IMG/VR virus record: IMGVR_UViG_3300044712_000810
Span: 62,001 to 126,000 of that record
Length of the DNA: 64,000 nucleotides
Strand: one strand, 5' to 3'
Shown: piece after piece, positions 6,547 through 58,234 of the stretch
Layout of the letters: every line of letters begins with the position of its first letter
Numbering within the stretch: the first letter of the stretch is position 1
The notes under the pieces: generated by a model
Seen by the model: the letters and a program-made list of their open reading frames with translations, nothing else
What the model was told of the DNA's origin: nothing
Databases searched by the model: none
Program-made: the position numbers and the translations under genes

Positions 6547-7314
6547 TTAAAATTTAAAGACTAATCTTCTACCGATGACTTCAAGGAACTGTTCATTGAT
6601 AATATCATCGATAAATTTAACAACACAAGAATCACCATCACAAATGCGAAGATGATCATTTTCAATAATTGACATTACATCGGCGTTTTCACAAATCAAA
6701 GTCTTTGGATTCTCAGGAATAAAATCCCCTGCACTTTCTGGAAGGAAAGTAACAACACGAGCATTTTGATGTGATGGATTTGTAACAATGTCATAAGTAA
6801 TAGGCATGATTGGTTCAGTTACAACCAATGTACCATCTTGAAGTGGTTCAACTCCACCTAATGCGCGTAATGAGAAACCAATATTAATCTTGTCTTTCGT
6901 AATAAGATTTGCAAGATCAGGTCCTTTAAATCCAGAAAGAGTTTCGATTTCACCAATAATTTGGCCATTTTTCAACTCTAATTTTCTTAAAACAGCGGCG
7001 CAATTATTTAACTCAACAATTGCAGCTCTTTTCTTAAGAGTATCTGGATCTGAAGAAACAAACATTGGATGGTCTATCTCAAGAAGACATGATCTATTGT
7101 TAACTCTTGGAGCAAGTCTATTAACAATAGATTCACAAATTGCTTGTGAATAACGACGCTTATTAGCATTAAGAACATCTTGCTCTTGAAGAAGAGCTGA
7201 GAATGCTAATTTTGGTTTGCCACCAACTGTAGTTTCTTCAATAATCTTAATCTGATCGTATGGCACTACCGATGTCTGTTCAAAAATCAGATTGTACTTT
7301 CCGTTTGCTGGCAT
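6547..7314 (-). CDS. Prohead core protease (T4 gp21-like)
   Basis: NANKRRYS, LLEIDHP, IGFSLRALG, ITYDIVTNPSHQNA motifs. Confidence 0.9.
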   Translation of the reverse strand: MPANGKYNLIFEQTSVVPYDQIKIIEETTVGGKPKLAFSALLQEQDVLNANKRRYSQAICESIVNRLAPRVNNRSCLLEIDHPMFVSSDPDTLKKRAAIVELNNCAAVLRKLELKNGQIIGEIETLSGFKGPDLANLITKDKINIGFSLRALGGVEPLQDGTLVVTEPIMPITYDIVTNPSHQNARVVTFLPESAGDFIPENPKTLICENADVMSIIENDHLRICDGDSCVVKFIDDIINEQFLEVIGRRLVFKF

Positions 7315-41142: not shown

Positions 41143-41361
41143 TTAATGCTCTTCTATTTTATGACTATGTACATGTTTAGCTAATTTAGCTAAAGCTCTC
41201 ATATGACCATTAAGTTGTTCTTTAGACATCTTATGACCATGTAATTGAATTCTTTTATTAATTCCATTAACTAAATTTCTTGCACTATTTGGATGTAACA
41301 CACGCTCAAATATCAGACCACTATTAATGGCAGTTTCTAATAAGGTCATAATGACCTCCAT
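41143..41361 (-). CDS. Hypothetical protein
   Basis: 72-aa ORF abutting neighbours. Confidence 0.55.
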   Translation of the reverse strand: MEVIMTLLETAINSGLIFERVLHPNSARNLVNGINKRIQLHGHKMSKEQLNGHMRALAKLAKHVHSHKIEEH

Positions 41362-41978
41362 TATCGATCTTTATTATTTTGTTTTGCTATATCTTTTTTA
41401 ACTGCGTCAGGTTTTGCAAAACCACCTAATGGAGTAATTGCTGATATTGTTCTTCCCAGTTTTCCATAACCCATTTGTTTAGCGGCAGCATGTCTATCTT
41501 TTATACCTTTAGCAATATACCCAATACCAGCGCCGACTTTTGCACCAGCAATAGCACCTGCTGCAGCGCCAGCTTTCATCATCTCTGGATCACCATGCCA
41601 TGCAGCAGCTCCTAATGAACCAAGTGCAGCAGCACCAATACCTGCACCAATACCTGCATGTTTTAATGTTTGTAATGAATTAGATTTATCTAAAAGTGCA
41701 CCAACACGATGAGATGCTTTTTTAGTATCTATATCTTTATTTGGATTATCTACTGCGTCCTTACCAATATAATGACCAGCAACCATTGTCGCGGGCGCAA
41801 CAACTGGAACTAAACTTCCAATCATTTTACCCCAACCAGATCCGACATGTTTCATTTTTAATTTTTGATCGTGGTCATTTTTTTCAATTTCATTAAGTAT
41901 TAAGCCTACTGAAATTGCTTCGAATAATTTTTCCATTTTTATATCCTTTAATGTCCCATTACGGCCATGAAATTCCAA
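41361..41978 (-). CDS. Glycine-zipper protein
   Basis: AGIGAGIGAAALGSLG..AGAAAGAIAGAKVGAGIG. Confidence 0.7.
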   Translation of the reverse strand: MEFHGRNGTLKDIKMEKLFEAISVGLILNEIEKNDHDQKLKMKHVGSGWGKMIGSLVPVVAPATMVAGHYIGKDAVDNPNKDIDTKKASHRVGALLDKSNSLQTLKHAGIGAGIGAAALGSLGAAAWHGDPEMMKAGAAAGAIAGAKVGAGIGYIAKGIKDRHAAAKQMGYGKLGRTISAITPLGGFAKPDAVKKDIAKQNNKDR

Positions 41979-42682
41979 AGACCATGAATTAAAATACCTA
42001 GCTTATAACCTGTATATTTTTTATTTTCATCTTTAGGATATTTATCATAATAATATTTCTGTATAAGTGTGGTTGTCGCATGTAAACCAACAGCTAAAAG
42101 TCTAGCAACTGTTGCTGTTACAATATCCATTCCAGCACCTAATAATCTAACCATATACATAGAAAATTCAGCAACGTTAAATACAACAAAAAATGTACCT
42201 GTAAAACCACCTTGAATAGATATCATCTTTGCTGTTTCTTCAGTTAATGGTGCAACAAATATTGAACCCATAGCATAACCTAACGACGGTGGTAAGCCAA
42301 TTATCATACAAACAACAGCAAGAAAATTATGAAGAAATGTATTTATGATTAAAATAATAGAAAGTAAAACTAATGATTTTCCAATTTTATTAAATGCAAC
42401 TTCAATACTAGATTCTTGAACTGCCGCTTGAAAATTTCGTTTTAATATAATACCAATATCGGCTTTATCTTTTGATTGTTTAAATTCAACAACAGCACGT
42501 TTAGAATATTTCTTAGCAATATTCTCAAGTTTGGAAGTTTCAACATTTCCATCTTTTAACTGTTGTGTTATTTTTTTAATTTTATTATCTTTCTGTTCAA
42601 TTAATGATTCTTTAAATGAACCAATTGAAAACGATTCAAGAAAAAGTTCATTAGTATACATATTTTTGGCGACCGAATACAT
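41948..42682 (-). CDS. PrsW-family (CPBP-type) intramembrane protease
   Basis: Four family motifs in order: APLTEETAK (EExxK), FNVAE (FxxxE), LHATT (H), IHGLWN (HxxxN); several TM helices. Confidence 0.7.
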   Translation of the reverse strand: MYSVAKNMYTNELFLESFSIGSFKESLIEQKDNKIKKITQQLKDGNVETSKLENIAKKYSKRAVVEFKQSKDKADIGIILKRNFQAAVQESSIEVAFNKIGKSLVLLSIILIINTFLHNFLAVVCMIIGLPPSLGYAMGSIFVAPLTEETAKMISIQGGFTGTFFVVFNVAEFSMYMVRLLGAGMDIVTATVARLLAVGLHATTTLIQKYYYDKYPKDENKKYTGYKLGILIHGLWNFMAVMGH

Positions 42683-45968: not shown

Positions 45969-47204
45969 ATGGCAAAGAATGAACAAACTGAAAACAGAGT
46001 CGAAATGCCATTGGCAGATCTGATTCAAAACTTTGTCGTTCCGAACTGCTATTTGCAGTGCGACAAAGACACGTCAGATAAAGGCGGCGTGGCAATTCCA
46101 TACATCGTGTCGAAGCCTGGCGCCGGTAAGACATCAGTTATCGAGGCGCTTTGCAAGAACAATGGATGGGGACTCATGTCCGTTCACTTTGCCCTCAAGC
46201 CTATCGAAGAGCTTGGTGGCATTCCGAACTTCACCAAAGTTCACATCAACGGCAAGGAAGTTTCAGGTACCGAATGGACCGTTACCGATATGGTAACGAA
46301 ACTGTGGGAGATGCACAACGAAACCAAAGAGGTTTTGGCGAAGGACGGGTCAACCGTTACCGAACCCAAGTACAAAATCATCATACTGCTGTATGACGAT
46401 GCTCACCTTTGCGGTCCCGGACACATGGCATTCTTCTACGAACCTTTCACCGAAAGAACAATTCGTGGGCACAAGTTGCCTCCGAACTGCGCACAAGCAA
46501 TGGCAGGAAACGACAGCAACAAAGCAGGCGCAAAAGCCTTCTTCTCCGCTATCACCAACCGTTGCGCTCGTCTCTATGCAAGAGCAGAATTCAAACCTTG
46601 GAAAGAAATGTTCGCTCTTCCCAAGCAGGTTCACCCGGCAGTTGTTTCTTTCCTCGGAAAGGACAACTATCAGTTCCAGTTCTTCCATGGCGAAGAAGTT
46701 CAGGATTCTCCTTGGGCATCACCCAGATCCTGGACTCGTCTCGCAAACTTCATCGAGGCGTATGAAAAGTGGAATGGTGGAAAAGCAATGCCTGCTTCCG
46801 AACTGCGCTTCTACGCTGAAGCTCACGTCGGAAAATCTGCAGGAAACGAATTTTCCAACTACTATTCCGTATTCACCAAATTCAATCTGGATCGTGATCT
46901 CGATAACTTCAAGAACTTCCAACTTCCCTCAAACGATATCGACAAATACGCATTCGCATTTGCGATCACCGCGCATTACTGCGGCAACAAGGAACTGAGA
47001 AAGGTCAAGAGCGAAAACTTCGCTCACATCCTTTTCCGTTACCTTGAAGACTGCCGTGAAGTCGGCATCGTCATGATGAAGGATATCATGTCCCTCGAAA
47101 AGATCGTCAAAGATGAAAACATCTTCGGCGCTGTCGCGAAGCATCTGGAAAAACTGAAGCCCACTTGCGTTACCGCGCTGTTGCAAGAAGTCGCTCGCCT
47201 GTAG
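45969..47204 (+). CDS. MoxR-like AAA+ ATPase
   Basis: Walker A SKPGAGKT, GGIP, Walker B LLYDD, AGN, AITNR, ASPRSW. Confidence 0.85.
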   Translation: MAKNEQTENRVEMPLADLIQNFVVPNCYLQCDKDTSDKGGVAIPYIVSKPGAGKTSVIEALCKNNGWGLMSVHFALKPIEELGGIPNFTKVHINGKEVSGTEWTVTDMVTKLWEMHNETKEVLAKDGSTVTEPKYKIIILLYDDAHLCGPGHMAFFYEPFTERTIRGHKLPPNCAQAMAGNDSNKAGAKAFFSAITNRCARLYARAEFKPWKEMFALPKQVHPAVVSFLGKDNYQFQFFHGEEVQDSPWASPRSWTRLANFIEAYEKWNGGKAMPASELRFYAEAHVGKSAGNEFSNYYSVFTKFNLDRDLDNFKNFQLPSNDIDKYAFAFAITAHYCGNKELRKVKSENFAHILFRYLEDCREVGIVMMKDIMSLEKIVKDENIFGAVAKHLEKLKPTCVTALLQEVARL

Positions 47205-47212
47205 GATAATAC

Positions 47213-48553
47213 ATGAGTGCGAATCTGGCGAAAGTCAAAAAAATAATCGAACAAGCCAGATTGAAGCTGATCCGTAAAGAATACTTATTCTTCGGTCTCT
47301 TCTGCGGCAAGTTCGTGTGGAAGCATTACGATTTCGGTGATGAAATGAAGGATATCGAAGGTTGTGTCTATCTTCCGAACGACCCAAAGAATCCTGATAA
47401 AGAAGTGATGGATAACGCAATCCATCTCAATGATAGATTCATTTCAAAAGACGATTATACATATTTGAATCTTTGCGATCTTGTACTGCATGAATCGCTA
47501 CACATCATAAACAAACACGGAATACGTCGCGGATCGAGAGATCCAAAACTTTGGAATATTGCAGGTGACCATGTCATCGACAGATTCCTCCGTGATTTGA
47601 ATATGACTAAACCATATCATAGGTGGAACGTAATTCCAGAACTCGACAAAGCACTTCCAAAGTGTTCTGCCGAGGAAGCCTATATGTGGCTTGAAAAAAA
47701 TCAAAAGAAATTCACAATATCACAAGATCCTGCATCAGGACAAATTACTATTACAGATGGGCAGGGAAATACATTCCATGTCAATCCATCGCAAGGTGGT
47801 GTGACATCTGGTAATGTTGATCCCAAAGTAAAACAAATGGTTGAAGAACTTGTTGCAGGCGCCAGAGCAATTCACGAGTCATCGAAAGATCGTGGTGTTG
47901 GTTCCGCAGCAATTTCTGCATATCTTGATGATGTTCTTAAGGTTGTGATTCCATGGCAAGAACTGCTTGAAATCGCGATCAAAACAAATATCATAATGAA
48001 ACCGGACGATTATGGTTGGGCAAACCCCAACAAACGCCTCAGATGTCATGGCCTTGTGCTTCCTGGAAGCATAATGACAGAAACAAATGAAGGCGTTGGA
48101 ACTCTCATAGTTCACGTAGACACTTCTGGATCAGTTAACGACACACAGCTTAAAGAAGCTGCTGGAATAATCTGCGAATCTATGAGATATTTCAAAACAA
48201 TTAAACTCATTACTGCCGACTGGAACATTCAACAGGAAGTTGATTTCGACAGCGACAGTATTAGTGATTTCCTTAACTTCTGTCAAAAAGAAGGATTTAA
48301 AGGTCGTGGCGGCACATCACATAAACCAACGTTTGATCGAATCAATGAAATCTGGGAAGACAACATTGATGATCTCTCGATGGTAATTTCAATAACCGAT
48401 GGATATTCTGATATTGAACAAATATATACAGTATATCCATTCATAACAAACCACGTTCCGTTGGTTTTCCTTCTCAATGGCGGATCGAGGGAACTAAATC
48501 TCAATCCTGATATTGGGAAAATAAAACAAATCGTCATGGACGATGCAAAATAA
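47213..48553 (+). CDS. Metallopeptidase-VWA protein (DUF2201-like)
   Basis: LHESLH (HExxH), WNIAGDHVID, VDTSGSV MIDAS motif, GRGGT, ITDG. Confidence 0.85.
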   Translation: MSANLAKVKKIIEQARLKLIRKEYLFFGLFCGKFVWKHYDFGDEMKDIEGCVYLPNDPKNPDKEVMDNAIHLNDRFISKDDYTYLNLCDLVLHESLHIINKHGIRRGSRDPKLWNIAGDHVIDRFLRDLNMTKPYHRWNVIPELDKALPKCSAEEAYMWLEKNQKKFTISQDPASGQITITDGQGNTFHVNPSQGGVTSGNVDPKVKQMVEELVAGARAIHESSKDRGVGSAAISAYLDDVLKVVIPWQELLEIAIKTNIIMKPDDYGWANPNKRLRCHGLVLPGSIMTETNEGVGTLIVHVDTSGSVNDTQLKEAAGIICESMRYFKTIKLITADWNIQQEVDFDSDSISDFLNFCQKEGFKGRGGTSHKPTFDRINEIWEDNIDDLSMVISITDGYSDIEQIYTVYPFITNHVPLVFLLNGGSRELNLNPDIGKIKQIVMDDAK

Positions 48554-48559
48554 CATTCA

Positions 48560-48589
48560 GGGAGGCCTTTCGGCCTCCCCATTTTTTTT
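48560..48589 (+). terminator. Rho-independent terminator
   Basis: GGGAGGCC-TTTC-GGCCTCCC then a poly-T tract. Confidence 0.85.
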
Positions 48590-48809
48590 ATTGCTTTCCA
48601 TGTGGATACTTTGTATAACCGGTTCCACTATCTGTTGAGCTTTGAATTGACGCCACTCTAGGACCAATTGGAGCCGGTCTCGAAGGAGTCGGCGGTGGAT
48701 GTATTTGTTTATCCATTGGTGATAGTGACGTAACTTTACGCTGATTAGCAGCTGATTGAATATATCCACCAGGCATTTGTCTGGTAAGTTCAAATAATAC
48801 ACTTATCAT
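48588..48809 (-). CDS. Hypothetical Pro-rich protein
   Basis: 73-aa ORF overlapping the upstream stop codon. Confidence 0.55.
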   Translation of the reverse strand: MISVLFELTRQMPGGYIQSAANQRKVTSLSPMDKQIHPPPTPSRPAPIGPRVASIQSSTDSGTGYTKYPHGKQ

Positions 48810-49111
48810 TTCGAACTCCCATTTAACGCCCTAGCGGCAATTAAAGATTGTAGATGTTCGGGATAATCATCCATAAATCTTTCTCGAACTTCTTTTTTCT
48901 GACGATCATGTTGCTTTAATCTTTCAAGTTCTTGCTCCATACTAGACGCACGATGACCATGTTCATCAGTATGTGCAGAACCCACTCCATATTTTTCATC
49001 AATCTTTTTATTTTTATGTTTATTATACAAGTGCTTTGCACTTAAAATTGCGGCGACAGCCAATCCTGCCGCCGCACCATGTTTAAGGAGATCCTCTGAT
49101 TCAAAGGGCAT
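48806..49111 (-). CDS. Small protein with N-terminal Gly/Ala hydrophobic helix
   Basis: LKHGAAAGLAVAAILSAKHLY; ATG 49111 after GGAGGG. Confidence 0.65.
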   Translation of the reverse strand: MPFESEDLLKHGAAAGLAVAAILSAKHLYNKHKNKKIDEKYGVGSAHTDEHGHRASSMEQELERLKQHDRQKKEVRERFMDDYPEHLQSLIAARALNGSSK

Positions 49112-49124
49112 GTTGCCCTCCATA

Positions 49125-49457
49125 TTAAAGATAGGTATTAATTTCGTTTTCTACAATAGCTTTTTGGTCTACGAGAAAATTTGAATTGAATGATGTTACT
49201 TCATGAATATATTGTGCTGTAGCAGCTTCAGTAAATACATTAATATTTTTGATTGTTTCAGCAATATTTTCGCCAAGGAATTCGCCAGGATTGGCAAGAA
49301 CGAAATTCTTTAATGTTTCTTTAAACTCAACAGCAGCACCCATTGTTGCTTCTACGAGTTCTTCATTTTCTGACAATACACGTACTACATCCTCGTTTTC
49401 AAAAAGAGCTTTAACTTGGCTCATATTAAATTCCTCCAAGACTTTATTTTTGTTCAA
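49125..49457 (-). CDS. Hypothetical acidic protein
   Basis: 110-aa ORF. Confidence 0.6.
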   Translation of the reverse strand: MNKNKVLEEFNMSQVKALFENEDVVRVLSENEELVEATMGAAVEFKETLKNFVLANPGEFLGENIAETIKNINVFTEAATAQYIHEVTSFNSNFLVDQKAIVENEINTYL

Positions 49458-49479
49458 TTAAACTATATTACCAAACAAC

Positions 49480-49959
49480 TTATTTTTTCAGTTTTGAAAG
49501 ACGCTTACGAAGAGCAACAGCACCAAGACCAGCAGCTAAAGCTGAACCAGCGGCATACTTTGCCCATGGATGATCTTCATCAAAATCCTTAGCAGCAGTG
49601 CCAGCATCTTCAGCAGCACGTTTTGCTTTTGTTGCAAGACTACCACGATCTGGGCCAGGAGTATCTAAATCTTCAGCCTTACGTTTAATAGCTTTACCAG
49701 CATCACGGGCTACACGACCACCTTTCTTTGCAAGTTCTTCAGCTTTTTCTTTAGCTTCACCAGCAAGTTCTTTGCCACCTTTTATTACTCTATCTACATC
49801 TTTCTTGTGATCAGAAACATCTTCCATTGGATCGCCTGAAGATGATTCATTAAGTGCCTTATTAAGTTCTTCTTTTACGCCCATATCGGTTTCCCCATTT
49901 CCTTTCTCAATGTTTTCTTGAAGAGATTCCATGATAATTTTGTTAACATCAAATGACAT
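49480..49959 (-). CDS. Protein with C-terminal hydrophobic helix and basic tail
   Basis: Ends PWAKYAAGSALAAGLGAVALRKRLSKLKK; ATG 49959 after GGAGGA. Confidence 0.7.
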   Translation of the reverse strand: MSFDVNKIIMESLQENIEKGNGETDMGVKEELNKALNESSSGDPMEDVSDHKKDVDRVIKGGKELAGEAKEKAEELAKKGGRVARDAGKAIKRKAEDLDTPGPDRGSLATKAKRAAEDAGTAAKDFDEDHPWAKYAAGSALAAGLGAVALRKRLSKLKK

Positions 49960-49991
49960 AGTATTATCCTCCACTATAATTTATTTATTAT

Positions 49992-50540
49992 TTAACCTGC
50001 TCTACGACGTGAAAGTAACCAACCTGCTCCAAGACCAGCTGCTGCTGCTAATGGTGCAGGAGAATCCTCTAATGCTTTATAACCTTTTGAGGCTATATTT
50101 TTTACACTATCATATACACCTGGATTTTCACCTGTTACAGGCGATGTTAACGGTTTAGCAATCGCACTGGGCATTCCTTGAGGAGTTGCATCACGATTAC
50201 CAATTCCTTCTGATTGTTTAATATTTCCAGGATTAGGTACTGGTTGAGTTGGTGTAGGCATTGTTTGACCTCCAGCCTTTACTTGATTGTCTGCAACTCT
50301 TTGTGCTCCTGGAATTGCAGTATTTTGTGGAACTTGATTATCTATTGATCTGACTGATCCAGGAACTGCACTTGGACGTTGCACAAAGTTTGGATCATTT
50401 TGCAAATTCGTTGGTGTTACTCCAGGATTAGGAGAACCAGTCATTGCACCACGACCACGAGCTAAATCTTGTTTTTTCAAAAAATCAAATGTTTCTTGCG
50501 CTCCAGGCGATAAAGAACCTCCACCAATTGGTCCAGCCAT
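49992..50540 (-). CDS. Pro/Gln-rich protein with C-terminal PAP-helix-RRR tail
   Basis: Ends KGYKALEDSPAPLAAAAGLGAGWLLSRRRAG. Confidence 0.7.
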   Translation of the reverse strand: MAGPIGGGSLSPGAQETFDFLKKQDLARGRGAMTGSPNPGVTPTNLQNDPNFVQRPSAVPGSVRSIDNQVPQNTAIPGAQRVADNQVKAGGQTMPTPTQPVPNPGNIKQSEGIGNRDATPQGMPSAIAKPLTSPVTGENPGVYDSVKNIASKGYKALEDSPAPLAAAAGLGAGWLLSRRRAG

Positions 50541-50542
50541 AA

Positions 50543-51118
50543 TTAGCCTCCTTGACGACGACGGCTAAGGAGATATGCGGCACCAAGTCCACCGGCAGCA
50601 GCTAATGGCGCTGGTGAATCTTCTAATGCTTTAAAACCTTTGGCAGCAATATTTTTAACATTACCATATACTGAATCATCATGTTGCACTGGTGCTGCTT
50701 GTGCCACTTGTTGTGGTGAAGCAACTGGAGCAACATCAGCCGGATGATTAACTTTTACACCACTTTGTTGAGCATGATATTCAGCTTTAGCTTTCTGTGC
50801 TACTGCTTCAGCTTCTGCTTTTTTTGCTTTTGTTAAAGCTTCTGCTTGTTCTTGTGCACTTTGTTGTTCGTGTTTTTGTAATGGTGCGTTTTTATCAGGA
50901 TTTGCTCCACGACCACGCATCATTTCTTGTTCAGCAGGTGTTGGTACTGGTTGTTGATCATTTTTCTTATTCATAGCATTATAAATACCATAACCAAGAC
51001 CACCGGCAGCACCAGCTCCAAGACCAACCATTGCAACTTTTTTTCCAGTTCCAGTTCCAGATTTAGTAGTATCAACCGCAATCTCATACATATTTTTTAA
51101 TGCATTTAAAACGCTCAT
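50543..51118 (-). CDS. Paralog with C-terminal PAP-helix-RRR tail
   Basis: Ends KGFKALEDSPAPLAAAGGLGAAYLLSRRRQGG; also has an N-terminal GLGAGAAGGLG helix. Confidence 0.7.
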   Translation of the reverse strand: MSVLNALKNMYEIAVDTTKSGTGTGKKVAMVGLGAGAAGGLGYGIYNAMNKKNDQQPVPTPAEQEMMRGRGANPDKNAPLQKHEQQSAQEQAEALTKAKKAEAEAVAQKAKAEYHAQQSGVKVNHPADVAPVASPQQVAQAAPVQHDDSVYGNVKNIAAKGFKALEDSPAPLAAAGGLGAAYLLSRRRQGG

Positions 51119-51131
51119 ATTTGCATTTCTC

Positions 51132-52412
51132 CTATGATACTGAAATATTTAACCATCCACCTTTACCCATAATTTTTGTAATTGTTGGATCATATATTTG
51201 AATTAACAGTGGATTGGTTGGAGTGGGTTTACATTTATCCCAAAATTCTGATGAAAACTTAAATGTTACTTTATTATCATCAGGATTTAAAGTTTCAATT
51301 GGGTAATTATAATTATATTCATCTTTTCCAGAAATAACATTATAAGAATAATATTTCTGAATTTTAAAATCCTTCGGATCAAAATGAACAATTAAATATA
51401 TACCAGATTGAGTTTCATGCACTTTAAATTGATCTGTTGTTGAGATCAATAAATTTCTACGAACAATGCCCATGAAGTCATTAATATCAAGTCCGAGTTT
51501 TTTAGCTTCCCCAATTATTCTTAATGCAGTTTCATCAAGTATTTTACTATCAAATACATAACCAGAGGCTTCTTGAATCTCTTGTTGTGTATATTTACGA
51601 GTACGTTTCTTAATAAATTCATCAGAAAATAAATATGGATTTATATACTTTTGGGCCGGGAAATCTAAAATAGGAGTATCGCGACCCATAGACATAGAAA
51701 CGTTAAGTGTTTCAATTGGTTTATCATCTTGTGTTGAGAATAAGAACATTGGCCACTGCATCATATATGTCATATCAAATTGACATGAATATGAACGCTG
51801 TGTTGAATCTGGACTTGATGCACTTATAGACTCTAAACGAATCATTGGAGTATATTTAAGTGAAAAACAATAATCAACTTGACCAAGAACATCATTAGGT
51901 TTAACAAATAAATTGAGGATATCATGTTCATTTGGATCAAAGTTAAAATTGCTAAGGAAAATGTTTGATACTTCAATGAATGAAGTAAAATCAAAAATGG
52001 AAATCCATTTGTTCAATGGTAAATATCTCTTTATAACATGAGACAATTCCTTAGCTTGGAATTGTGATTCACAATTTATACTTACAGTGATTGGAATATT
52101 TGCAGATTCTTCTTGTAAGAAAAGAACTCTGTTATTAGTTCGATTATACAATACCGGTAACTGATTCATATTGAACATTCGTTGTTGCAATAATGTTTCA
52201 GTTCTTTGTCCAAATGATGGTGTTTCATCATTTATAGTAACCATACATGTAGGTAAATCAAAATTAACTTTATAGTCTTTTTCTAATTGGAATGTTCTAG
52301 TACCGGTATTAAACTCATAACGTTTGATATATTTTGAATCTTGTAATATATAATTATCTAGTAATGCACTTACAGATAATCCAATATCATTGAAAAGACT
52401 ATGTATATACAT
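51132..52412 (-). CDS. Tail sheath stabiliser / tail completion protein (T4 gp15-like)
   Basis: LPTCMVTINDE, PITVSINCESQFQAKELSHVIKRYLP, RSYSCQFDMTY..WPMF. Confidence 0.5.
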   Translation of the reverse strand: MYIHSLFNDIGLSVSALLDNYILQDSKYIKRYEFNTGTRTFQLEKDYKVNFDLPTCMVTINDETPSFGQRTETLLQQRMFNMNQLPVLYNRTNNRVLFLQEESANIPITVSINCESQFQAKELSHVIKRYLPLNKWISIFDFTSFIEVSNIFLSNFNFDPNEHDILNLFVKPNDVLGQVDYCFSLKYTPMIRLESISASSPDSTQRSYSCQFDMTYMMQWPMFLFSTQDDKPIETLNVSMSMGRDTPILDFPAQKYINPYLFSDEFIKKRTRKYTQQEIQEASGYVFDSKILDETALRIIGEAKKLGLDINDFMGIVRRNLLISTTDQFKVHETQSGIYLIVHFDPKDFKIQKYYSYNVISGKDEYNYNYPIETLNPDDNKVTFKFSSEFWDKCKPTPTNPLLIQIYDPTITKIMGKGGWLNISVS

Positions 52413-52425
52413 TAATTACTCCAAC

Positions 52426-52566
52426 TTATTTAATTACCTTTTCAGTTGAATCTTCTGAAGGATTAATTGTTACTGTATTATTTTTAGTATTCTGTTTTGA
52501 TACTTTACCGCAACGTTTTGCTTCAATAATCAATGAAGCCTCTATTGCTTCTTGTAGATTTTTCAT
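52426..52566 (-). CDS. 46-aa hypothetical protein (not in ORF track)
   Basis: MKNLQEAIEASLIIEAKRCGKVSKQNTKNNTVTINPSEDSTEKVIK* fills the intergenic gap. Confidence 0.5.
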   Translation of the reverse strand: MKNLQEAIEASLIIEAKRCGKVSKQNTKNNTVTINPSEDSTEKVIK

Positions 52567-52577
52567 ATTATTTTACC

Positions 52578-53378
52578 TTATAATTGTGTAGTTTTAAGAG
52601 TACCATCATCTTCAACAGTGATTTTGAAATTGGTACCATTGGGAGAAGTTAGAATAATACCAGATTGTACTTGAGAAGGAGTATTAGAACGAACAAATAA
52701 ATCTTGATCTATTTGCCATTGTTCTGCTGTTTCTTTCCAAGTAAGTGATACATTCTGTTCTGTACCACGTTCAATTTCAATACGACAATCACTATTGGCT
52801 ACACCAGTAAGATCTTTATTTAAAGTAAATGTTGGTGAAGTTGTTCCATCAACATCTGACTTATTCGCTAATTCAGTCGCCAAACCTGTCATTGTTGGAC
52901 GATCAGTTAACGCTTGACTAAGATCTGTAATTGCATCAATTGGATGACAATTTAAATCATCACGGCCTTTCATTCCATTATGAAGACTTGAAAAGACACT
53001 AGCACCAATAAATGGTCTTGCATCAAAAATCGCATCATCATAAATAGCAGTAACACCACCATCGACATATACGATGGCAAGTGGAACATGTCCTTCTGGA
53101 ATGGCTGGAACTACAGGATTTGCAGATTCTAAACCATTAACTAAAAGAACATTAGCACGTTTGTCGATAACAACTACGACCCATTTTGCAGCAGAAGAGC
53201 TAGCAGTAATAGTAGGACTTGTACCGCCAGAATATTCAACAAAAGTTATACCATCATGCCAAAATGAACCTTCTGTTACTTTTACTTTCATAGAAGGAGT
53301 TGCGGTTGCATGAACTTTTAAATTTGCAAAGTATGCTCCTGCACGATTAAGTGAATCGCCTTTTGGTGGAAGTCCCAT
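52578..53378 (-). CDS. Virion structural / fibre-associated protein
   Basis: HPIDAITDL fibre-type motif; C-terminal ILTSPNGTNFKITVEDDGTL. Confidence 0.55.
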   Translation of the reverse strand: MGLPPKGDSLNRAGAYFANLKVHATATPSMKVKVTEGSFWHDGITFVEYSGGTSPTITASSSAAKWVVVVIDKRANVLLVNGLESANPVVPAIPEGHVPLAIVYVDGGVTAIYDDAIFDARPFIGASVFSSLHNGMKGRDDLNCHPIDAITDLSQALTDRPTMTGLATELANKSDVDGTTSPTFTLNKDLTGVANSDCRIEIERGTEQNVSLTWKETAEQWQIDQDLFVRSNTPSQVQSGIILTSPNGTNFKITVEDDGTLKTTQL

Positions 53379-53388
53379 ATTACTCCTC

Positions 53389-53736
53389 CTATTGATCTAA
53401 TTTAGCAGTTACAATTTTAATCTCAATTGGTTCACTGTTTGGATTTGTAATGAAAAATGTTTGTGGATCACCAGTATATACATATACAAATGTATTAGGC
53501 ATGGCTTGTGCACCAATTGATCCAATCTTTAATGTAAATTTCTTGGTTGAAGTAGCAATAAATGTATTTACGCCTTCAGCCATTTTAGAATCTGCTTCAT
53601 TAGCAGTTAAGAATTCTTTTCCCGAATAATATGATTTAGGTGTTGTTAAATAAACCTCATCTAAATATCTATGAACTTCATTTGTATCTGTCTCAGTTAA
53701 CTGAGCTAACAATTGAAGTTTTAATTGATCGGCCAT
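53389..53736 (-). CDS. Hypothetical protein
   Basis: 115-aa ORF. Confidence 0.6.
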   Translation of the reverse strand: MADQLKLQLLAQLTETDTNEVHRYLDEVYLTTPKSYYSGKEFLTANEADSKMAEGVNTFIATSTKKFTLKIGSIGAQAMPNTFVYVYTGDPQTFFITNPNSEPIEIKIVTAKLDQ

Positions 53737-55796: not shown

Positions 55797-56021
55797 TTAC
55801 GCGGGTTTAGGTATTCCTACTATTGGTTTGTATACATATTTTTCATAACCAGATGATACTTTTTTAGCAGTATCTTTTTTTAATCCTACATCTCGTAATC
55901 TTGAATATATATGAAGCGGACTTCCATAATGATTAACAGCATTATGAACATTACTTTTTACTTTTTGATAAGTATCACCTAACCATCCTTCATTAATCAT
56001 ATGGTTAGATATTGAGATCAT
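55797..56021 (-). CDS. Hypothetical protein
   Basis: 74 aa, MINE motif. Confidence 0.6.
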   Translation of the reverse strand: MISISNHMINEGWLGDTYQKVKSNVHNAVNHYGSPLHIYSRLRDVGLKKDTAKKVSSGYEKYVYKPIVGIPKPA

Positions 56022-58234
56022 TATGATTTCTCTTCAAGTGCCTCTACTCTTGCTGCAAGTTCTTGAATTGCTTTAATTATTGGAGAAATAAATTCATTAT
56101 AACGCAATCCATAGATATCATTAGCTTCATCATATACAAAACCAGCAAATGTAGATGAACATTTATTGATTAAAGTTTTTACTTCTTGTGCGATAAGACC
56201 ATAATGTTTTTGGTTGTCATTATTGTCCTTCCACTTATACGAAACAGGTCTTAATTCAAGAACAAAGTTAAGACCAAGATCTGAATTCTCGATATTTCCT
56301 TTCTTTCTTAAATCTGAAGTTTGAATTGTAGCGTTTGTTGCATAGATATCTTTCCATCTAATTCCAGGTGTACCTAAGCTATAAGTATCATCTGTTCCAG
56401 CAACAATTGCGCCTTCAACTGTTAATTTACCATTATTTGATGTTGTACCAACAAGTAAATCACCAGTATTATTAATTCTTACTTGTTCTGTGAATGTTCC
56501 GCCGGCAATACGTTTACCAAATGAAATAATAGAAGATGCATTATTATTATGTGATAATTGAAGTGAATTTGAATTTGCTTCAACTGTAATATCACCATCT
56601 GTTGCGCTTTGGAATATATTAAGTTTTCTATTATTACCATTAAGGTAGATATCACCAGTTGTATTAATAAAACCTGTTGTTCCGGCAGTTCCACCAACAC
56701 ACAATTTACCATCATTGGTAATCTTAACTTGTGTTGTGAATACGTCGGATGAGTTAATACTACCAAACAGTATTTCAGATGTTGCGGAAGTATTATGTGC
56801 AATTCTAATATCAGTTAATTCTTCATCGATAACAACGTTTCCGTTTGTTGAATCTTTTACAAAAATAACTTTATTTTCAGAACCTGTAAATAATACATTA
56901 CCATTAATGTTTAATCTTTCACTATTAGTAAAAGTATTTAAAGATAAGTTTCCAGTAGGACCTAATAACATTTCTGTTGTAAATGCTCCAGCACTATCTT
57001 TACGTCCAAACACCATACCAGCATTTGTTTTACTACTATGTGAAAGATACAATACACCACTGTTTTGATCGTCTGCAAAAATATCAATGTTACCGTTTGT
57101 TGTATCTTCTTTAATTCTAATCAATGGTAAGTTTGAAACAAGTTCAATATTACCATTAACAGTAAGATGTGACTTTTCAACTTCTGTGTTGATACTCATT
57201 TTACCACTACTAAATACACGAGCGGCCTCAACACCGTTACATGCAAAAGAAATTATACCTTTGCCTGGTGTATAAAAACCAGTATCATTGTCATTATCAC
57301 CATAGTCAAAGTATAATCTTGGCGCAGTAGCATCAATAGATGAACCAGATGTAATACCAACACGACCAGTGAATCTATCACCAGTCTTTTTAGCATAAAC
57401 AGCGGCAGCATGGAATGGACTTACTGCGCGATTTGATAAAGTTCCATCAATAACTTCTTGACGAGTACCTAAAGTAATTATACCAGCAGTAGTTTCACTT
57501 GAAAGTGGTATATTAGCAATTTTACTCCAATCAATTGATGTTACTTCATTATTTGTGTGATTGTGAGGAGGAAGCTGTTCAATTGGCATTTTACCAGTAC
57601 TATCAAGACTTGCGGTACCGTTATTCATACCAATGATTGATTTTAATGATAATGGTGAAACTGCGCGGGTATTATCTAAACCAGCCATAGTTTCAACATC
57701 TGTTGCTAACTCAACAATACCTGGAGTTGTTTGTGATGCACTTGGAATATTTTTCAGTTTAGACCAATCAATATCCACAAGAGTAGAATCACCATGAGTA
57801 TGTGAGTTATCATTAATCGCAACAGTTAATGTAGCATCGGCCATATTATTGAATATGGCAGAACCAGAAACATCACCAGTCAATGTAAGTCTTGGACTAG
57901 GAATGTTTGTTAGCATTGTAAAATCGACACTTCCCATCTCTCCACTTAAGTGTGAGTGAGGTGGAAGTTGTGCCATAGGAAGTTTTGAACTTTCGTCAAG
58001 TGATGCAATACCATTCGCAATACCACGAATACCATTTAGACTTTCACATGTAACAACCGCGTCTGTTGTTCCGGCAAAAGTTTCTTCGGTAGTCGCAAGT
58101 TTAACAATACCTGTAACAGTAGTTGTAGCACTTTTAAGGTGATCATTGTGAATAGTATCTCCGGCTTGGAATTCACTTAATGATGTAACACTTCCAGCTG
58201 TAAATACCCCTCTAAATGGTCTTTTATCAGCCAT
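56021..58234 (-). CDS. Tail fibre with C-terminal peptidase S74 intramolecular chaperone
   Basis: Fibre repeats GIVKLAT/GIVELAT/GIITLGT; TSDLRKKGNI..LRPVSYKW..YGLIAQEV..LRYNEFISPIIKAIQEL. Confidence 0.85.
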   Translation of the reverse strand: MADKRPFRGVFTAGSVTSLSEFQAGDTIHNDHLKSATTTVTGIVKLATTEETFAGTTDAVVTCESLNGIRGIANGIASLDESSKLPMAQLPPHSHLSGEMGSVDFTMLTNIPSPRLTLTGDVSGSAIFNNMADATLTVAINDNSHTHGDSTLVDIDWSKLKNIPSASQTTPGIVELATDVETMAGLDNTRAVSPLSLKSIIGMNNGTASLDSTGKMPIEQLPPHNHTNNEVTSIDWSKIANIPLSSETTAGIITLGTRQEVIDGTLSNRAVSPFHAAAVYAKKTGDRFTGRVGITSGSSIDATAPRLYFDYGDNDNDTGFYTPGKGIISFACNGVEAARVFSSGKMSINTEVEKSHLTVNGNIELVSNLPLIRIKEDTTNGNIDIFADDQNSGVLYLSHSSKTNAGMVFGRKDSAGAFTTEMLLGPTGNLSLNTFTNSERLNINGNVLFTGSENKVIFVKDSTNGNVVIDEELTDIRIAHNTSATSEILFGSINSSDVFTTQVKITNDGKLCVGGTAGTTGFINTTGDIYLNGNNRKLNIFQSATDGDITVEANSNSLQLSHNNNASSIISFGKRIAGGTFTEQVRINNTGDLLVGTTSNNGKLTVEGAIVAGTDDTYSLGTPGIRWKDIYATNATIQTSDLRKKGNIENSDLGLNFVLELRPVSYKWKDNNDNQKHYGLIAQEVKTLINKCSSTFAGFVYDEANDIYGLRYNEFISPIIKAIQELAARVEALEEKS

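What the first reader, a model, noticed from the sequence alone, without database searches (positions are those of the whole stretch)
49480..51118. Tandem paralogues ending in a PEP-CTERM-like tail (SPAP-hydrophobic helix-RRR)
Seen: two otherwise unrelated low-complexity proteins share a near-identical ~40-aa C-terminus (VKNIAxKGxKALEDSPAPLAAAxGLGAxxLLSRRR); a third ends in a similar helix plus RKR. Established: bacterial C-terminal sorting signals (PEP-CTERM, GlyGly-CTERM, MYXO-CTERM) have a motif + TM helix + Arg cluster architecture and are cleaved by dedicated membrane enzymes. Inference: a phage-encoded tail that targets variable cargo to a membrane or the virion interior. I know of no description of this in phages.
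Basis: partly seen in the sequence, partly recalled or inferred. Interest (0 to 1): 0.68.

Follow-up and report, generated by a model that had tools for sequence, protein, structure and literature searches.

The report
Phage proteins with ElaB-like membrane tails
Two neighbouring genes of a giant soil phage do share a conserved 40-residue tail, but it looks like an uncleaved membrane anchor of the bacterial YqjD/ElaB/YgaM type, reused on several variable small proteins in a whole group of related phages, rather than a cleaved PEP-CTERM-style sorting signal.

Summary
P0001 (window 50543-51118, minus strand) and P0002 (49992-50540, minus strand) share a 59%-identical 66-residue C-terminus and are otherwise unrelated. 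The tail codons give dS about 1.15 and dN about 0.16, so the copy is old and under purifying selection.

The PEP-CTERM reading is not supported:
- There is no N-terminal signal peptide.
- No signature motif is present.
- The genome lacks exosortase, rhombosortase, CPBP and sortase.
- Only two or three of about 545 genes carry such a tail.

The next gene, P0003, and its relatives match the glycine-zipper anchor of bacterial DUF883 proteins (YqjD/ElaB/YgaM). The profile-profile comparison gives 95% probability, E = 2e-8. The P0001/P0002 tails match only the helix-plus-Arg part (76%).

Relatives of the upstream 426-aa gene led to seven syntenic metagenomic phage loci. Six carry the same cluster at the end of the tail operon, with two to seven small low-complexity proteins bearing this module. 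The seventh, most distant locus keeps only weak traces. One relative has its own gene pair with a shared tail.

Best reading: uncleaved tail anchors that also serve as oligomerisation modules. The cluster's function is unknown, and packaged or ejected virion proteins remain a live rival. I rate it a new variant of a known kind, of moderate interest.

The parts
50543..51118 (-). P0001, 191 aa. It has an N-terminal Ala/Gly-rich segment (residues about 28-50), an Ala/Lys/Glu/Gln-rich helix (85-118), a Pro/Gln-rich linker, and the shared tail (residues 148-191, DNA 50543-50677).
   Evidence: ORF and translation. Tail similarity to P0002. A low-confidence AlphaFold2 model gives helix 148-167, a break at PAPL, and helix 172-187.
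49992..50540 (-). P0002, 182 aa. It is Pro/Gln/Asn/Gly-rich with no N-terminal hydrophobic stretch. The shared tail is residues 142-182 (DNA 49992-50117).
   Evidence: The DUF883 profile aligns to LAAAAGLGAGWLLSRR. Its positional counterpart L114:6960-7511 ends ENPTAAAAVLGLGAGWLGNKLFRKSGQ.
49480..49974 (-). P0003, 164 aa; the true start is probably the ATG at 49959. It is a divergent YqjD/ElaB/YgaM (DUF883)-like tail-anchored protein. The anchor module is residues 126-164 (DNA 49480-49599): DFDEDHPWAKYAAGSALAAGLGAVALRKRLSKLKK.
   Evidence: NCBIfam PRK10132, E = 9.6e-4. BLASTP to E. coli YgaM, E = 6e-7. Top hit among 1,689 ORFs for two DUF883 profiles. Local-shuffle p about 0.001. Phage-module HMM, E = 2e-15. 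hhalign A5 vs A6, 95.3%. Gene callers start it at residue 6.
49125..49457 (-). orf110, an acidic soluble protein that probably starts at the ATG at 49424. It is the best-conserved member of the cluster and has no anchor.
   Evidence: 99-104-aa orthologues sit at the same place in L114, L115, L117, L119, L120 and L124.
48806..49123 (-). P0004, 105 aa. The same kind of Ala/Gly-rich segment plus Lys cluster lies near the N-terminus (GAAAGLAVAAILSAKHLYNKHKNKK), followed by a charged domain.
   Evidence: Orthologues in L114, L115, L119, L120 and L124. Third-best hit in the genome for the phage-module HMM, not significant (E = 0.69).
48588..48809 (-). orf73, the last gene of the operon: a small basic Pro-rich protein that starts MISVLFELT.
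   Evidence: Orthologues of 64-79 aa in L114, L115, L117, L119, L120 and L124.
48558..48581 (.). Two-way intrinsic terminator (GGGAGGCC-TTTC-GGCCTCCC). It closes this minus-strand late operon and the convergent ATPase/DUF2201 pair.
51132..52412 (-). The 426-aa gene just upstream. It is a conserved marker of the phage group and was used to find the syntenic loci.
   Evidence: 80 relatives at 31-61% identity. Conserved gene order.

Best explanation
The shared tail is an uncleaved C-terminal membrane anchor of the same kind as the 'DUF883 C-terminal glycine-zipper region' of the bacterial tail-anchored proteins YqjD, ElaB and YgaM. It is not a sorting signal.

Its parts are a juxtamembrane helix (VKNIAxKGxKAL), an acidic residue followed by a helix-breaking Pro (EDSPAP), a short helix rich in Ala and Gly (GLGAG), and an Arg cluster.

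The window holds the last genes of a late tail/baseplate operon. In a group of related, mostly metagenomic large phages, these genes encode two to seven small, low-complexity proteins that reuse this module on different N-terminal parts. P0003 is the member most clearly related to DUF883. P0001 and P0002 carry a divergent subtype.

Inferred mechanism:
- The proteins are made in the cytoplasm without a signal peptide.
- The tail then inserts into the host inner membrane after translation.
- Its glycine zipper drives homo- or hetero-oligomerisation, as shown for YqjD.
- The variable disordered or coiled parts are thereby held at the membrane.

The matched tails of adjacent pairs, seen here and independently in L124, suggest the pair works with a common partner or with each other.

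Shown here: the sequence relationships, the selection on the tail, the synteny, and the absence of sorting-system features. Inferred only: membrane insertion, topology, oligomerisation, lack of cleavage, and the biological role.
For: Link to DUF883:
- P0003 matches DUF883 by four routes, more than local composition explains (1 and 0 of 1,000 block shuffles reach its score).
- A profile of 14 phage modules against 28 bacterial DUF883 proteins gives hhalign probability 95.3%, E = 2.3e-8, over 36 columns spanning helix, EHPW, zipper and RR.
- Pfam DUF883_C weakly hits one relative (E = 0.0036).
- The bacterial DUF883 HMM hits four phage members at E <= 2e-3.
- The P0001/P0002 tails against DUF883 give 76% probability, E = 2.3e-5, over 19 columns.

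Family features named by Njenga et al. (bioRxiv 10.1101/2024.08.16.608256) are present: the helix-breaking Pro, Gly residues in the helix, and terminal Arg-Arg or Arg-Lys.

Other support:
- The tails' hydrophobicity lies at the weak end of the range of 28 real DUF883 anchors.
- There is no signal peptide.
- The tail is under purifying selection.
- The cluster is conserved in six syntenic loci.
- An HMM built only from relatives ranks P0003, P0002 and P0004 as the top three of 1,689 ORFs.
Against: - Homology of the P0001/P0002 tail to DUF883_C or to the P0003-type module is not established. The tails against the phage-module profile give 9%. P0002 scores only E = 0.076 and P0001 does not score.
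- No window protein reaches a Pfam DUF883 threshold.
- The hydrophobic core is short (16 residues) and weak (summed Hessa-scale insertion energy +4 kcal/mol).
- Long basic clusters such as RKRLSKLKK would be hard to move across a membrane in an N-in/C-out tail-anchor topology.
- In three relatives the module is internal, and in the P0004 type it is N-terminal.
- The complex test of the two tails gave no verdict.
- No experiment bears on localisation.
Confidence: 0.5

Rival explanations
1. Packaged or ejected virion proteins. The cluster encodes small internal proteins that are loaded into the particle and delivered with the DNA. A short N-terminal amphipathic motif ending in Glu would act like the T4 capsid-targeting sequence and be trimmed by the phage's T4-type prohead protease. 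The Gly-zipper plus basic module would insert into the host membrane from outside or bind DNA.
For: - The genes end a late structural operon, after tail-fibre and baseplate-like genes.
- A T4 gp21-like prohead protease is encoded at window 6547-7314.
- Most cluster proteins begin with a hydrophobic-x-x-hydrophobic-hydrophobic-(x)-Glu motif: 23 of 44 against 35 of 545 genome-wide.
- T4 internal proteins are a diverse set that share only a targeting sequence (PMC3012670).
- Weakly hydrophobic helices and long basic tails suit proteins that must stay soluble before insertion.
Against: - The N-terminal motif was defined after looking at the sequences.
- An HMM built from relatives alone recovers only two orthologues, at E about 0.03.
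- P0002 lacks the motif.
- No proteomic data exist.
- Nothing links the C-terminal tail itself to virion loading.
Confidence: 0.2
2. The tail is a cleaved C-terminal sorting signal of the PEP-CTERM, GlyGly-CTERM or MYXO-CTERM class, processed by the phage's PrsW-like membrane protease.
For: - The design is three-part: motif, helix, Arg cluster.
- NCBIfam MYXO-CTERM and GC_trans_RRR models give borderline hits (14-19 bits).
- A PrsW-like protease with plausible catalytic motifs lies at 41948-42682.
- A protease of the CPBP family is now known to be a sorting enzyme (PMC11980579).
Against: - No signal peptide.
- The hits cover only the helix plus RRR, and the whole proteins score below the cut-offs.
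- No Cys, PEP or GlyGly motif.
- No exosortase, rhomboid, CPBP or sortase.
- Only 2-3 carriers per genome.
- The module is internal or N-terminal in some relatives.
- No PrsW-like gene within 10 kb in two relatives.
Confidence: 0.06
3. Lysis or lysis-timing proteins (holin-, antiholin- or spanin-like). These would be small membrane proteins with one weakly hydrophobic helix and a highly charged end, made late to control envelope disruption.
For: - The genes sit at the end of a late operon.
- The helices are Ala/Gly/Ser-rich, like signal-anchor-release domains (my knowledge of P1 Lyz and the phage 21 pinholin).
- The C-termini are charged.
- P0004 has an N-terminal anchor followed by a charged coiled region, as i-spanins and T4 RI do (my knowledge).
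Against: - No endolysin lies in or next to the cluster in any locus.
- No lipoprotein partner was seen.
- There are no PHROG or Pfam holin or spanin hits.
- Hydrophilic N-terminal parts of 140-240 aa are not typical of holins.
Confidence: 0.1
4. Not a membrane element. The Ala/Gly zipper would be a soluble helix-packing motif, and the basic cluster would bind nucleic acid or an acidic partner such as orf110.
For: - Hydrophobicity is very weak, and some relatives have Asn inside the segment (GGVNLAKKLR).
- The position within the protein varies.
- An acidic conserved partner gene lies in the cluster.
Against: - Real DUF883 anchors with the same composition are membrane anchors in E. coli (PMC6389858).
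- The profile match to them is 95%.
Confidence: 0.08

Closest known systems
[quoted passage not shown]
   Same: - No signal peptide, and a helical N-terminal part.
- An acidic residue followed by a helix-breaking Pro, with Trp after it in P0003.
- A Gly-rich helix of about 16-19 residues, then terminal Arg-Arg or Arg-Lys.
- Profile-profile match of 95% for the P0003 type and 76% for the P0001/P0002 tails.
- Several paralogues per genome.
   Different: - The genes are phage-encoded, at the end of a structural operon.
- All window proteins score below Pfam thresholds.
- P0001 and P0002 have Ala-Pro instead of Trp, and a core three residues shorter.
- The basic clusters are much longer (up to seven charges).
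- The N-terminal parts are unrelated, Pro/Gln-rich or coiled.
- No yqjE or yqjK neighbours.
- Ribosome binding is untested.
PEP-CTERM / GlyGly-CTERM / MYXO-CTERM / LPXTG C-terminal sorting signals
   Same: A short motif, then a hydrophobic helix, then an Arg/Lys cluster at the C-terminus. The NCBIfam models give borderline hits on the helix plus RRR.
   Different: - No Sec signal peptide.
- No family signature.
- No cognate sorting enzyme.
- Very few carriers per genome.
- The module is not always C-terminal in relatives.
T4 internal proteins (IPI, IPII, IPIII) with a capsid-targeting sequence
   Same: A set of small, fast-evolving, diverse proteins sharing only a short terminal module. A T4-type prohead protease is present. 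Many members have an N-terminal motif ending in Glu.
   Different: In T4 the shared module is N-terminal and is cleaved. Here the conserved element under study is C-terminal and hydrophobic. Virion association is unknown.

Membership tests
PEP-CTERM-type C-terminal sorting signals (exosortase, rhombosortase, myxosortase, sortase substrates) | N-terminal Sec signal peptide on the substrate | tested here: not met
   24 of 26 tail-bearing proteins have acidic N-termini and no hydrophobic stretch. P0001 and L124:9150-9683 have only a weak Ala/Gly segment at residues 19-50. This was a hydropathy heuristic, not a trained predictor.
PEP-CTERM-type C-terminal sorting signals (exosortase, rhombosortase, myxosortase, sortase substrates) | Family signature motif before the helix (PEP, GlyGly, invariant Cys, LPXTG) and a model score above the cut-off | tested here: not met
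   No PEP-CTERM or GlyGly-CTERM hit. MYXO-CTERM scores 14.2 bits (cut-off 20). GC_trans_RRR scores 15.7 bits (cut-off 15.85) on whole proteins. The alignments cover only the helix plus RRR, and there is no Cys.
PEP-CTERM-type C-terminal sorting signals (exosortase, rhombosortase, myxosortase, sortase substrates) | Hydrophobic helix followed by a basic cluster at the extreme C-terminus | tested here: met
   Met in P0001, P0002 and P0003. In relatives L117:7378-8049, L120:12275-12574 and L124:10584-11054 the module is internal.
PEP-CTERM-type C-terminal sorting signals (exosortase, rhombosortase, myxosortase, sortase substrates) | A cognate sorting enzyme encoded alongside, and many substrates per genome | tested here: not met
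   No Exosortase_EpsH, Rhomboid, Rce1-like/CPBP or Sortase in the 315-kb genome. There are only 2-3 carriers among about 545 genes. The PrsW-like gene is present but unlinked. A host enzyme cannot be excluded.
DUF883 (YqjD/ElaB/YgaM) tail-anchored proteins | Score above the Pfam or NCBIfam cut-off | tested here: not met
   No Pfam DUF883 or DUF883_C hit on window proteins. P0003 scores 19.9 bits against PRK10132 (cut-off 157). The best relative scores 17.4 bits against DUF883_C (cut-off 27).
DUF883 (YqjD/ElaB/YgaM) tail-anchored proteins | Remote homology by profile-profile comparison | tested here: met
   Met for the P0003-type module: hhalign 95.3%, E = 2.3e-8, 36 columns. For the P0001/P0002 tails the result is inconclusive: 76% over 19 columns and 9% against the phage module.
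DUF883 (YqjD/ElaB/YgaM) tail-anchored proteins | Helix-breaking Pro, Gly residues in the helix, terminal Arg-Arg or Arg-Lys, no signal peptide | tested here: met
   P0003 has EDHPW...GxxxxxGxG...RKR. P0001 and P0002 have EDSPAP...GLGAx...RRR.
DUF883 (YqjD/ElaB/YgaM) tail-anchored proteins | Trp directly after the conserved Pro (YqjD, ElaB and YgaM subfamilies) | tested here: inconclusive
   Present in P0003 and L114:7527-7814. Absent from P0001 and P0002 (Ala-Pro) and from many phage paralogues.
DUF883 (YqjD/ElaB/YgaM) tail-anchored proteins | Inner-membrane localisation through the tail, and ribosome binding through the N-terminus | not testable with these tools
   This needs fractionation and ribosome co-sedimentation. 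The AlphaFold2 models are low-confidence (pLDDT about 56) and show only helix-kink-helix.
T4-type internal (packaged) proteins | N-terminal targeting sequence ending at a prohead-protease site, with the protease present | tested here: inconclusive
   The protease is present (Peptidase_S77, E = 1.8e-8). The motif is enriched in the cluster but was defined after the fact and is only weakly recovered by an independent HMM.

The most novel reading that the evidence does not exclude
A group of large environmental phages has taken the glycine-zipper tail anchor of bacterial ribosome-silencing proteins (YqjD/ElaB/YgaM) and expanded it into a modular 'address tag'. The tag is carried by two to seven fast-evolving disordered proteins per genome, with adjacent pairs keeping matched tails because they assemble together. 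These proteins would act at the host membrane, by tethering or silencing ribosomes or by forming the entry or exit apparatus. Some may be delivered from the virion.
Probability: 0.25. Interest if true: 0.7.

Novelty: new variant of a known kind. Interest (0 to 1): 0.45.

Why it matters
Tail-anchored proteins are rare in bacteria. The DUF883 anchor has only recently been tied to a function: membrane tethering and blocking of ribosomes.

A phage-borne, multi-copy version fused to variable disordered regions would be the first sign that phages use this anchor. It would also give a defined 40-residue module to test as a portable membrane or oligomerisation tag.

The result also corrects a tempting misreading. 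'Motif + helix + RRR' alone does not make a sortase-type signal. The presence or absence of an N-terminal signal peptide separates the two classes.

Tried and rejected
Searches for relatives of the tail proteins themselves:
- tblastn of P0001 and P0002 against 50,697 phage records found nothing. The same search with the 426-aa neighbour also found nothing, and blastn of the locus found nothing.
- The word-indexed search of 5.8 billion proteins found nothing for P0001 and only itself for P0003.
- IMG/VR pattern scans with P0001, the 426-aa gene and the DUF2201 gene found nothing.
- An exhaustive HMMER search of 1.84 billion representatives with the tail profile found only itself plus three spurious repeat proteins.
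- At the sequence level the exact tail therefore appears only in this phage. Related tails were found only through synteny.

Other steps that led nowhere:
- The ESM Atlas look-alike search for P0003 gave scores of 0.82 or less, which is uninformative.
- The genome-contig scan with YqjD returned only close enterobacterial orthologues. It was replaced by a phylum-wide family search.
- Laying reads showed only that identical fragments of this phage occur in a second rhizosphere study. There were no variants.
- The complex prediction for the two tails gave no verdict (score 0.02). This is not evidence either way.
- P0004 and orf110 are not relatives of E. coli YqjK or YqjE.
- PrsW co-occurrence could not be checked genome-wide in relatives because those records are not held.
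- The idea that the P0001/P0002 tail is simply a copy of the P0003 tail is rejected.

No alternative genetic code was used.
Full report
SETTING

The window is bases 62001-126000 of a 314,837-bp virus record with direct terminal repeats and 33% G+C. It came from a rhizosphere metagenome, and identical fragments occur in a second rhizosphere study. It has no close relative among cultured phages.

The finding lies at the end of a minus-strand late operon. The gene order is:
- a tail-fibre gene (56021-58234) and a baseplate-like gene (52578-53378);
- a conserved 426-aa gene (51132-52412);
- P0001, P0002, P0003, orf110, P0004 and orf73;
- a two-way terminator at 48558-48581.

A MoxR-like ATPase and a DUF2201/VWA gene converge on this operon from the other side.

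OBSERVATION

P0001 (191 aa) and P0002 (182 aa) share one segment, 39/66 identical with E = 2e-12, and nothing else. About 40 residues are nearly identical: VYxxVKNIAxKGxKALEDSPAPLAAAxGLGAxxLLSRRR.

Over the 39 tail codons, 17.75 synonymous and 12.25 non-synonymous differences give dS about 1.15 and dN about 0.16.

Within the genome the tail is confined to these two genes. Only they and P0003 show a C-terminal uncharged segment plus a basic cluster among proteins over 100 aa.

ARE THERE RELATIVES?

Direct searches with the tail proteins found none. This held in phage records, in 5.8 billion clustered proteins, in IMG/VR, and in an exhaustive HMMER pass over 1.84 billion representatives.

The way in was synteny. 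The upstream 426-aa gene has 80 relatives at 31-61% identity. I fetched seven contexts with DNA: L114, L115, L117/L118, L119, L120, L123 and L124.

Six of them keep the same order: the 426-like gene, then six to ten small genes, then the convergent DUF2201 + ATPase pair (not visible within the stretch of L115 that was fetched). An eighth contig, returned as a gene table without DNA, shows the same order.

The small genes include clear orthologues of P0003, orf110, P0004 and orf73. They also include further low-complexity proteins that end in 'acidic-x-Pro, Ala/Gly-rich helix, Arg/Lys cluster'. Examples are EHPVAAGIAAGAVGALGLRKLLR and DLPKTGALAAAVAAGLGALALRKKLK.

An HMM built only from those relatives hits P0003 at E = 2e-15. 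It ranks P0002 (E = 0.076) and P0004 (E = 0.69) next among all 1,689 ORFs of the genome.

The positional counterparts of P0001 and P0002 in the nearest relative, L114, carry weakly similar tails: VKNVSKK...VSGLAAGALIRRKR and ENPTAAAAVLGLGAGWLGNKLFRK.

In L124 the first two genes after the 426-like gene differ in their N-terminal parts: one is Pro/Gln-rich and the other has an N-terminal Gly zipper, as here. Yet they share 49 residues at 67% identity (E = 1e-19), and over the 46 codons from AEHGNA onward dS is 0.76 and dN 0.15. 'Paired genes with matched tails' is therefore a recurring design and not an accident of one genome.

The most distant locus, L123, keeps only weak traces.

WHAT THE MODULE RESEMBLES

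P0003 matches the E. coli tail-anchored proteins YqjD, ElaB and YgaM by several routes:
- NCBIfam PRK10132, E = 9.6e-4, over almost the full model.
- BLASTP to YgaM, E = 6e-7.
- It is the single top hit among 1,689 ORFs for a profile of the three E. coli paralogues (E = 1.3e-3).
- It is also the top hit for a profile of 28 DUF883 proteins drawn from 151 Pseudomonadota genomes (E = 9e-4).
- Shuffles that preserve local composition reach its score 1 and 0 times in 1,000.

With the phage family in hand, the link becomes firm:
- 14 phage modules against 28 bacterial DUF883 proteins give hhalign probability 95.3% and E = 2.3e-8. The 36 aligned columns span the juxtamembrane helix, EHPW, the zipper and the RR.
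- Four phage members hit the bacterial HMM.
- Pfam DUF883_C weakly hits one relative.

Njenga et al. name the family's conserved features: the helix-breaking Pro, Gly residues in the helix (needed for dimerisation), a Trp after the Pro, and terminal Arg-Arg or Arg-Lys.
- P0003 has all of them.
- The P0001/P0002 tails have the Pro, the Gly residues and the RRR. They lack the Trp and are three residues shorter.
- Their profile matches DUF883 at 76% over the helix plus RRR only.
- It matches the P0003-type module hardly at all (9%).

I therefore class the P0001/P0002 tail as the same kind of element. Common descent is plausible but unproven.

WHY NOT A SORTING SIGNAL?

Sortase, exosortase, rhombosortase and myxosortase substrates are exported through an N-terminal signal peptide and carry a signature motif. 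They occur in many copies beside a dedicated enzyme (PMC11980579). None of this is seen here:
- N-termini are acidic and lack a hydrophobic stretch in 24 of 26 members.
- No signature model passes, and none aligns beyond the helix plus RRR.
- The genome lacks all four enzyme families.
- Carriers are very few.
- In three relatives the module is internal, and in the P0004 type it is N-terminal.

The PrsW-like gene (41948-42682) is real, scoring 25.9 bits against a cut-off of 23.5. However, it lies about 6 kb beyond a convergent operon and has no counterpart within 10 kb in two relatives.

MECHANISM AND ITS LIMITS

I favour uncleaved tail anchoring in the host inner membrane, with zipper-driven oligomerisation. 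By analogy with YqjD, the N-terminal parts would face the cytoplasm.

Weak points:
- The helices are short and only marginally hydrophobic, although they fall within the range of real DUF883 anchors.
- The long basic clusters fit poorly with a C-out topology.
- The AlphaFold2 models are low-confidence.
- The complex test gave no verdict.

The main rival is that the cluster encodes packaged or ejected proteins:
- It closes a structural operon.
- A T4-type prohead protease is present.
- Most members begin with a short motif ending in Glu, reminiscent of the T4 capsid-targeting sequence.

That motif was spotted after the fact and is only weakly recovered independently. A lysis role and a non-membrane role are less likely but are not excluded.

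NOVELTY

No PHROG family covers these proteins or DUF883. Full-text searches found no phage-encoded DUF883 or tail-anchor family.

I rate this a new variant of a known kind: a known bacterial anchor in a new setting, multiplied and fused to variable disordered proteins. Interest is moderate, because the biological role remains open.

Noticed in passing
window 41948-42682 (-) and 41361-41978 (-): A PrsW-family membrane protease (Pfam 25.9 bits, cut-off 23.5) with EETAK and HGLWN motifs and a 95-aa soluble N-terminal part. The next gene encodes a 205-aa protein full of Gly/Ala-zipper segments. No counterpart appears at this position in relatives L125 and L126.
   Followed up: partly
window 6547-7314 (-): A T4 gp21-like prohead serine protease (Peptidase_S77, E = 1.8e-8, above the cut-off). 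A weaker second match lies at genome 19354-19689, outside the window.
   Followed up: no
N-termini of cluster genes, window 48588-51118 and loci L114-L124: Most small proteins of the cluster, with or without the tail, start with a short amphipathic motif ending in Glu (DINKIIMES, ISVLFELT, VKALFENE). A regex matches 23 of 44 against 35 of 545 genome-wide. This could be a targeting or processing signal, but it was defined after the fact and is only weakly supported by an independent HMM.
   Followed up: partly
L124:8592-9134 and L124:9150-9683: A second, independent pair of adjacent genes with unrelated N-terminal parts and a shared C-terminal stretch (67% identity over 49 aa, E = 1e-19; over the 46 codons from AEHGNA onward, dS 0.76 and dN 0.15). 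Within-genome tails resemble each other more than their counterparts in other genomes do, which suggests co-evolution or gene conversion.
   Followed up: partly
window 45969-48553 (+): A MoxR-like ATPase (PHROG 1297, E = 3e-34) plus a DUF2201 metallopeptidase/VWA protein. The pair converges on the cluster and is seen in six of the eight related loci examined, sharing one two-way terminator here.
   Followed up: partly
window 49480-49974 and 49125-49457: The longest-ORF starts are probably wrong. Orthologues and public gene calls begin P0003 at the ATG at 49959 (MSFDVNK...). orf110 probably begins at the ATG at 49424 (MSQVKALFENE...).
   Followed up: partly
window 51132-52412 (-): The 426-aa protein is widespread in metagenomic phage contigs (80 relatives). 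Many of these are longer (about 545 aa) and carry an extra fibronectin-III / Pur_ac_phosph_N-like domain. One source names a relative 'hemoglobin-like flavoprotein', which looks like a mis-annotation.
   Followed up: no
window 48800-53400: Identical 151-198-bp contig pieces of this phage occur in a second rhizosphere study, so the phage is not confined to one sample.
   Followed up: partly
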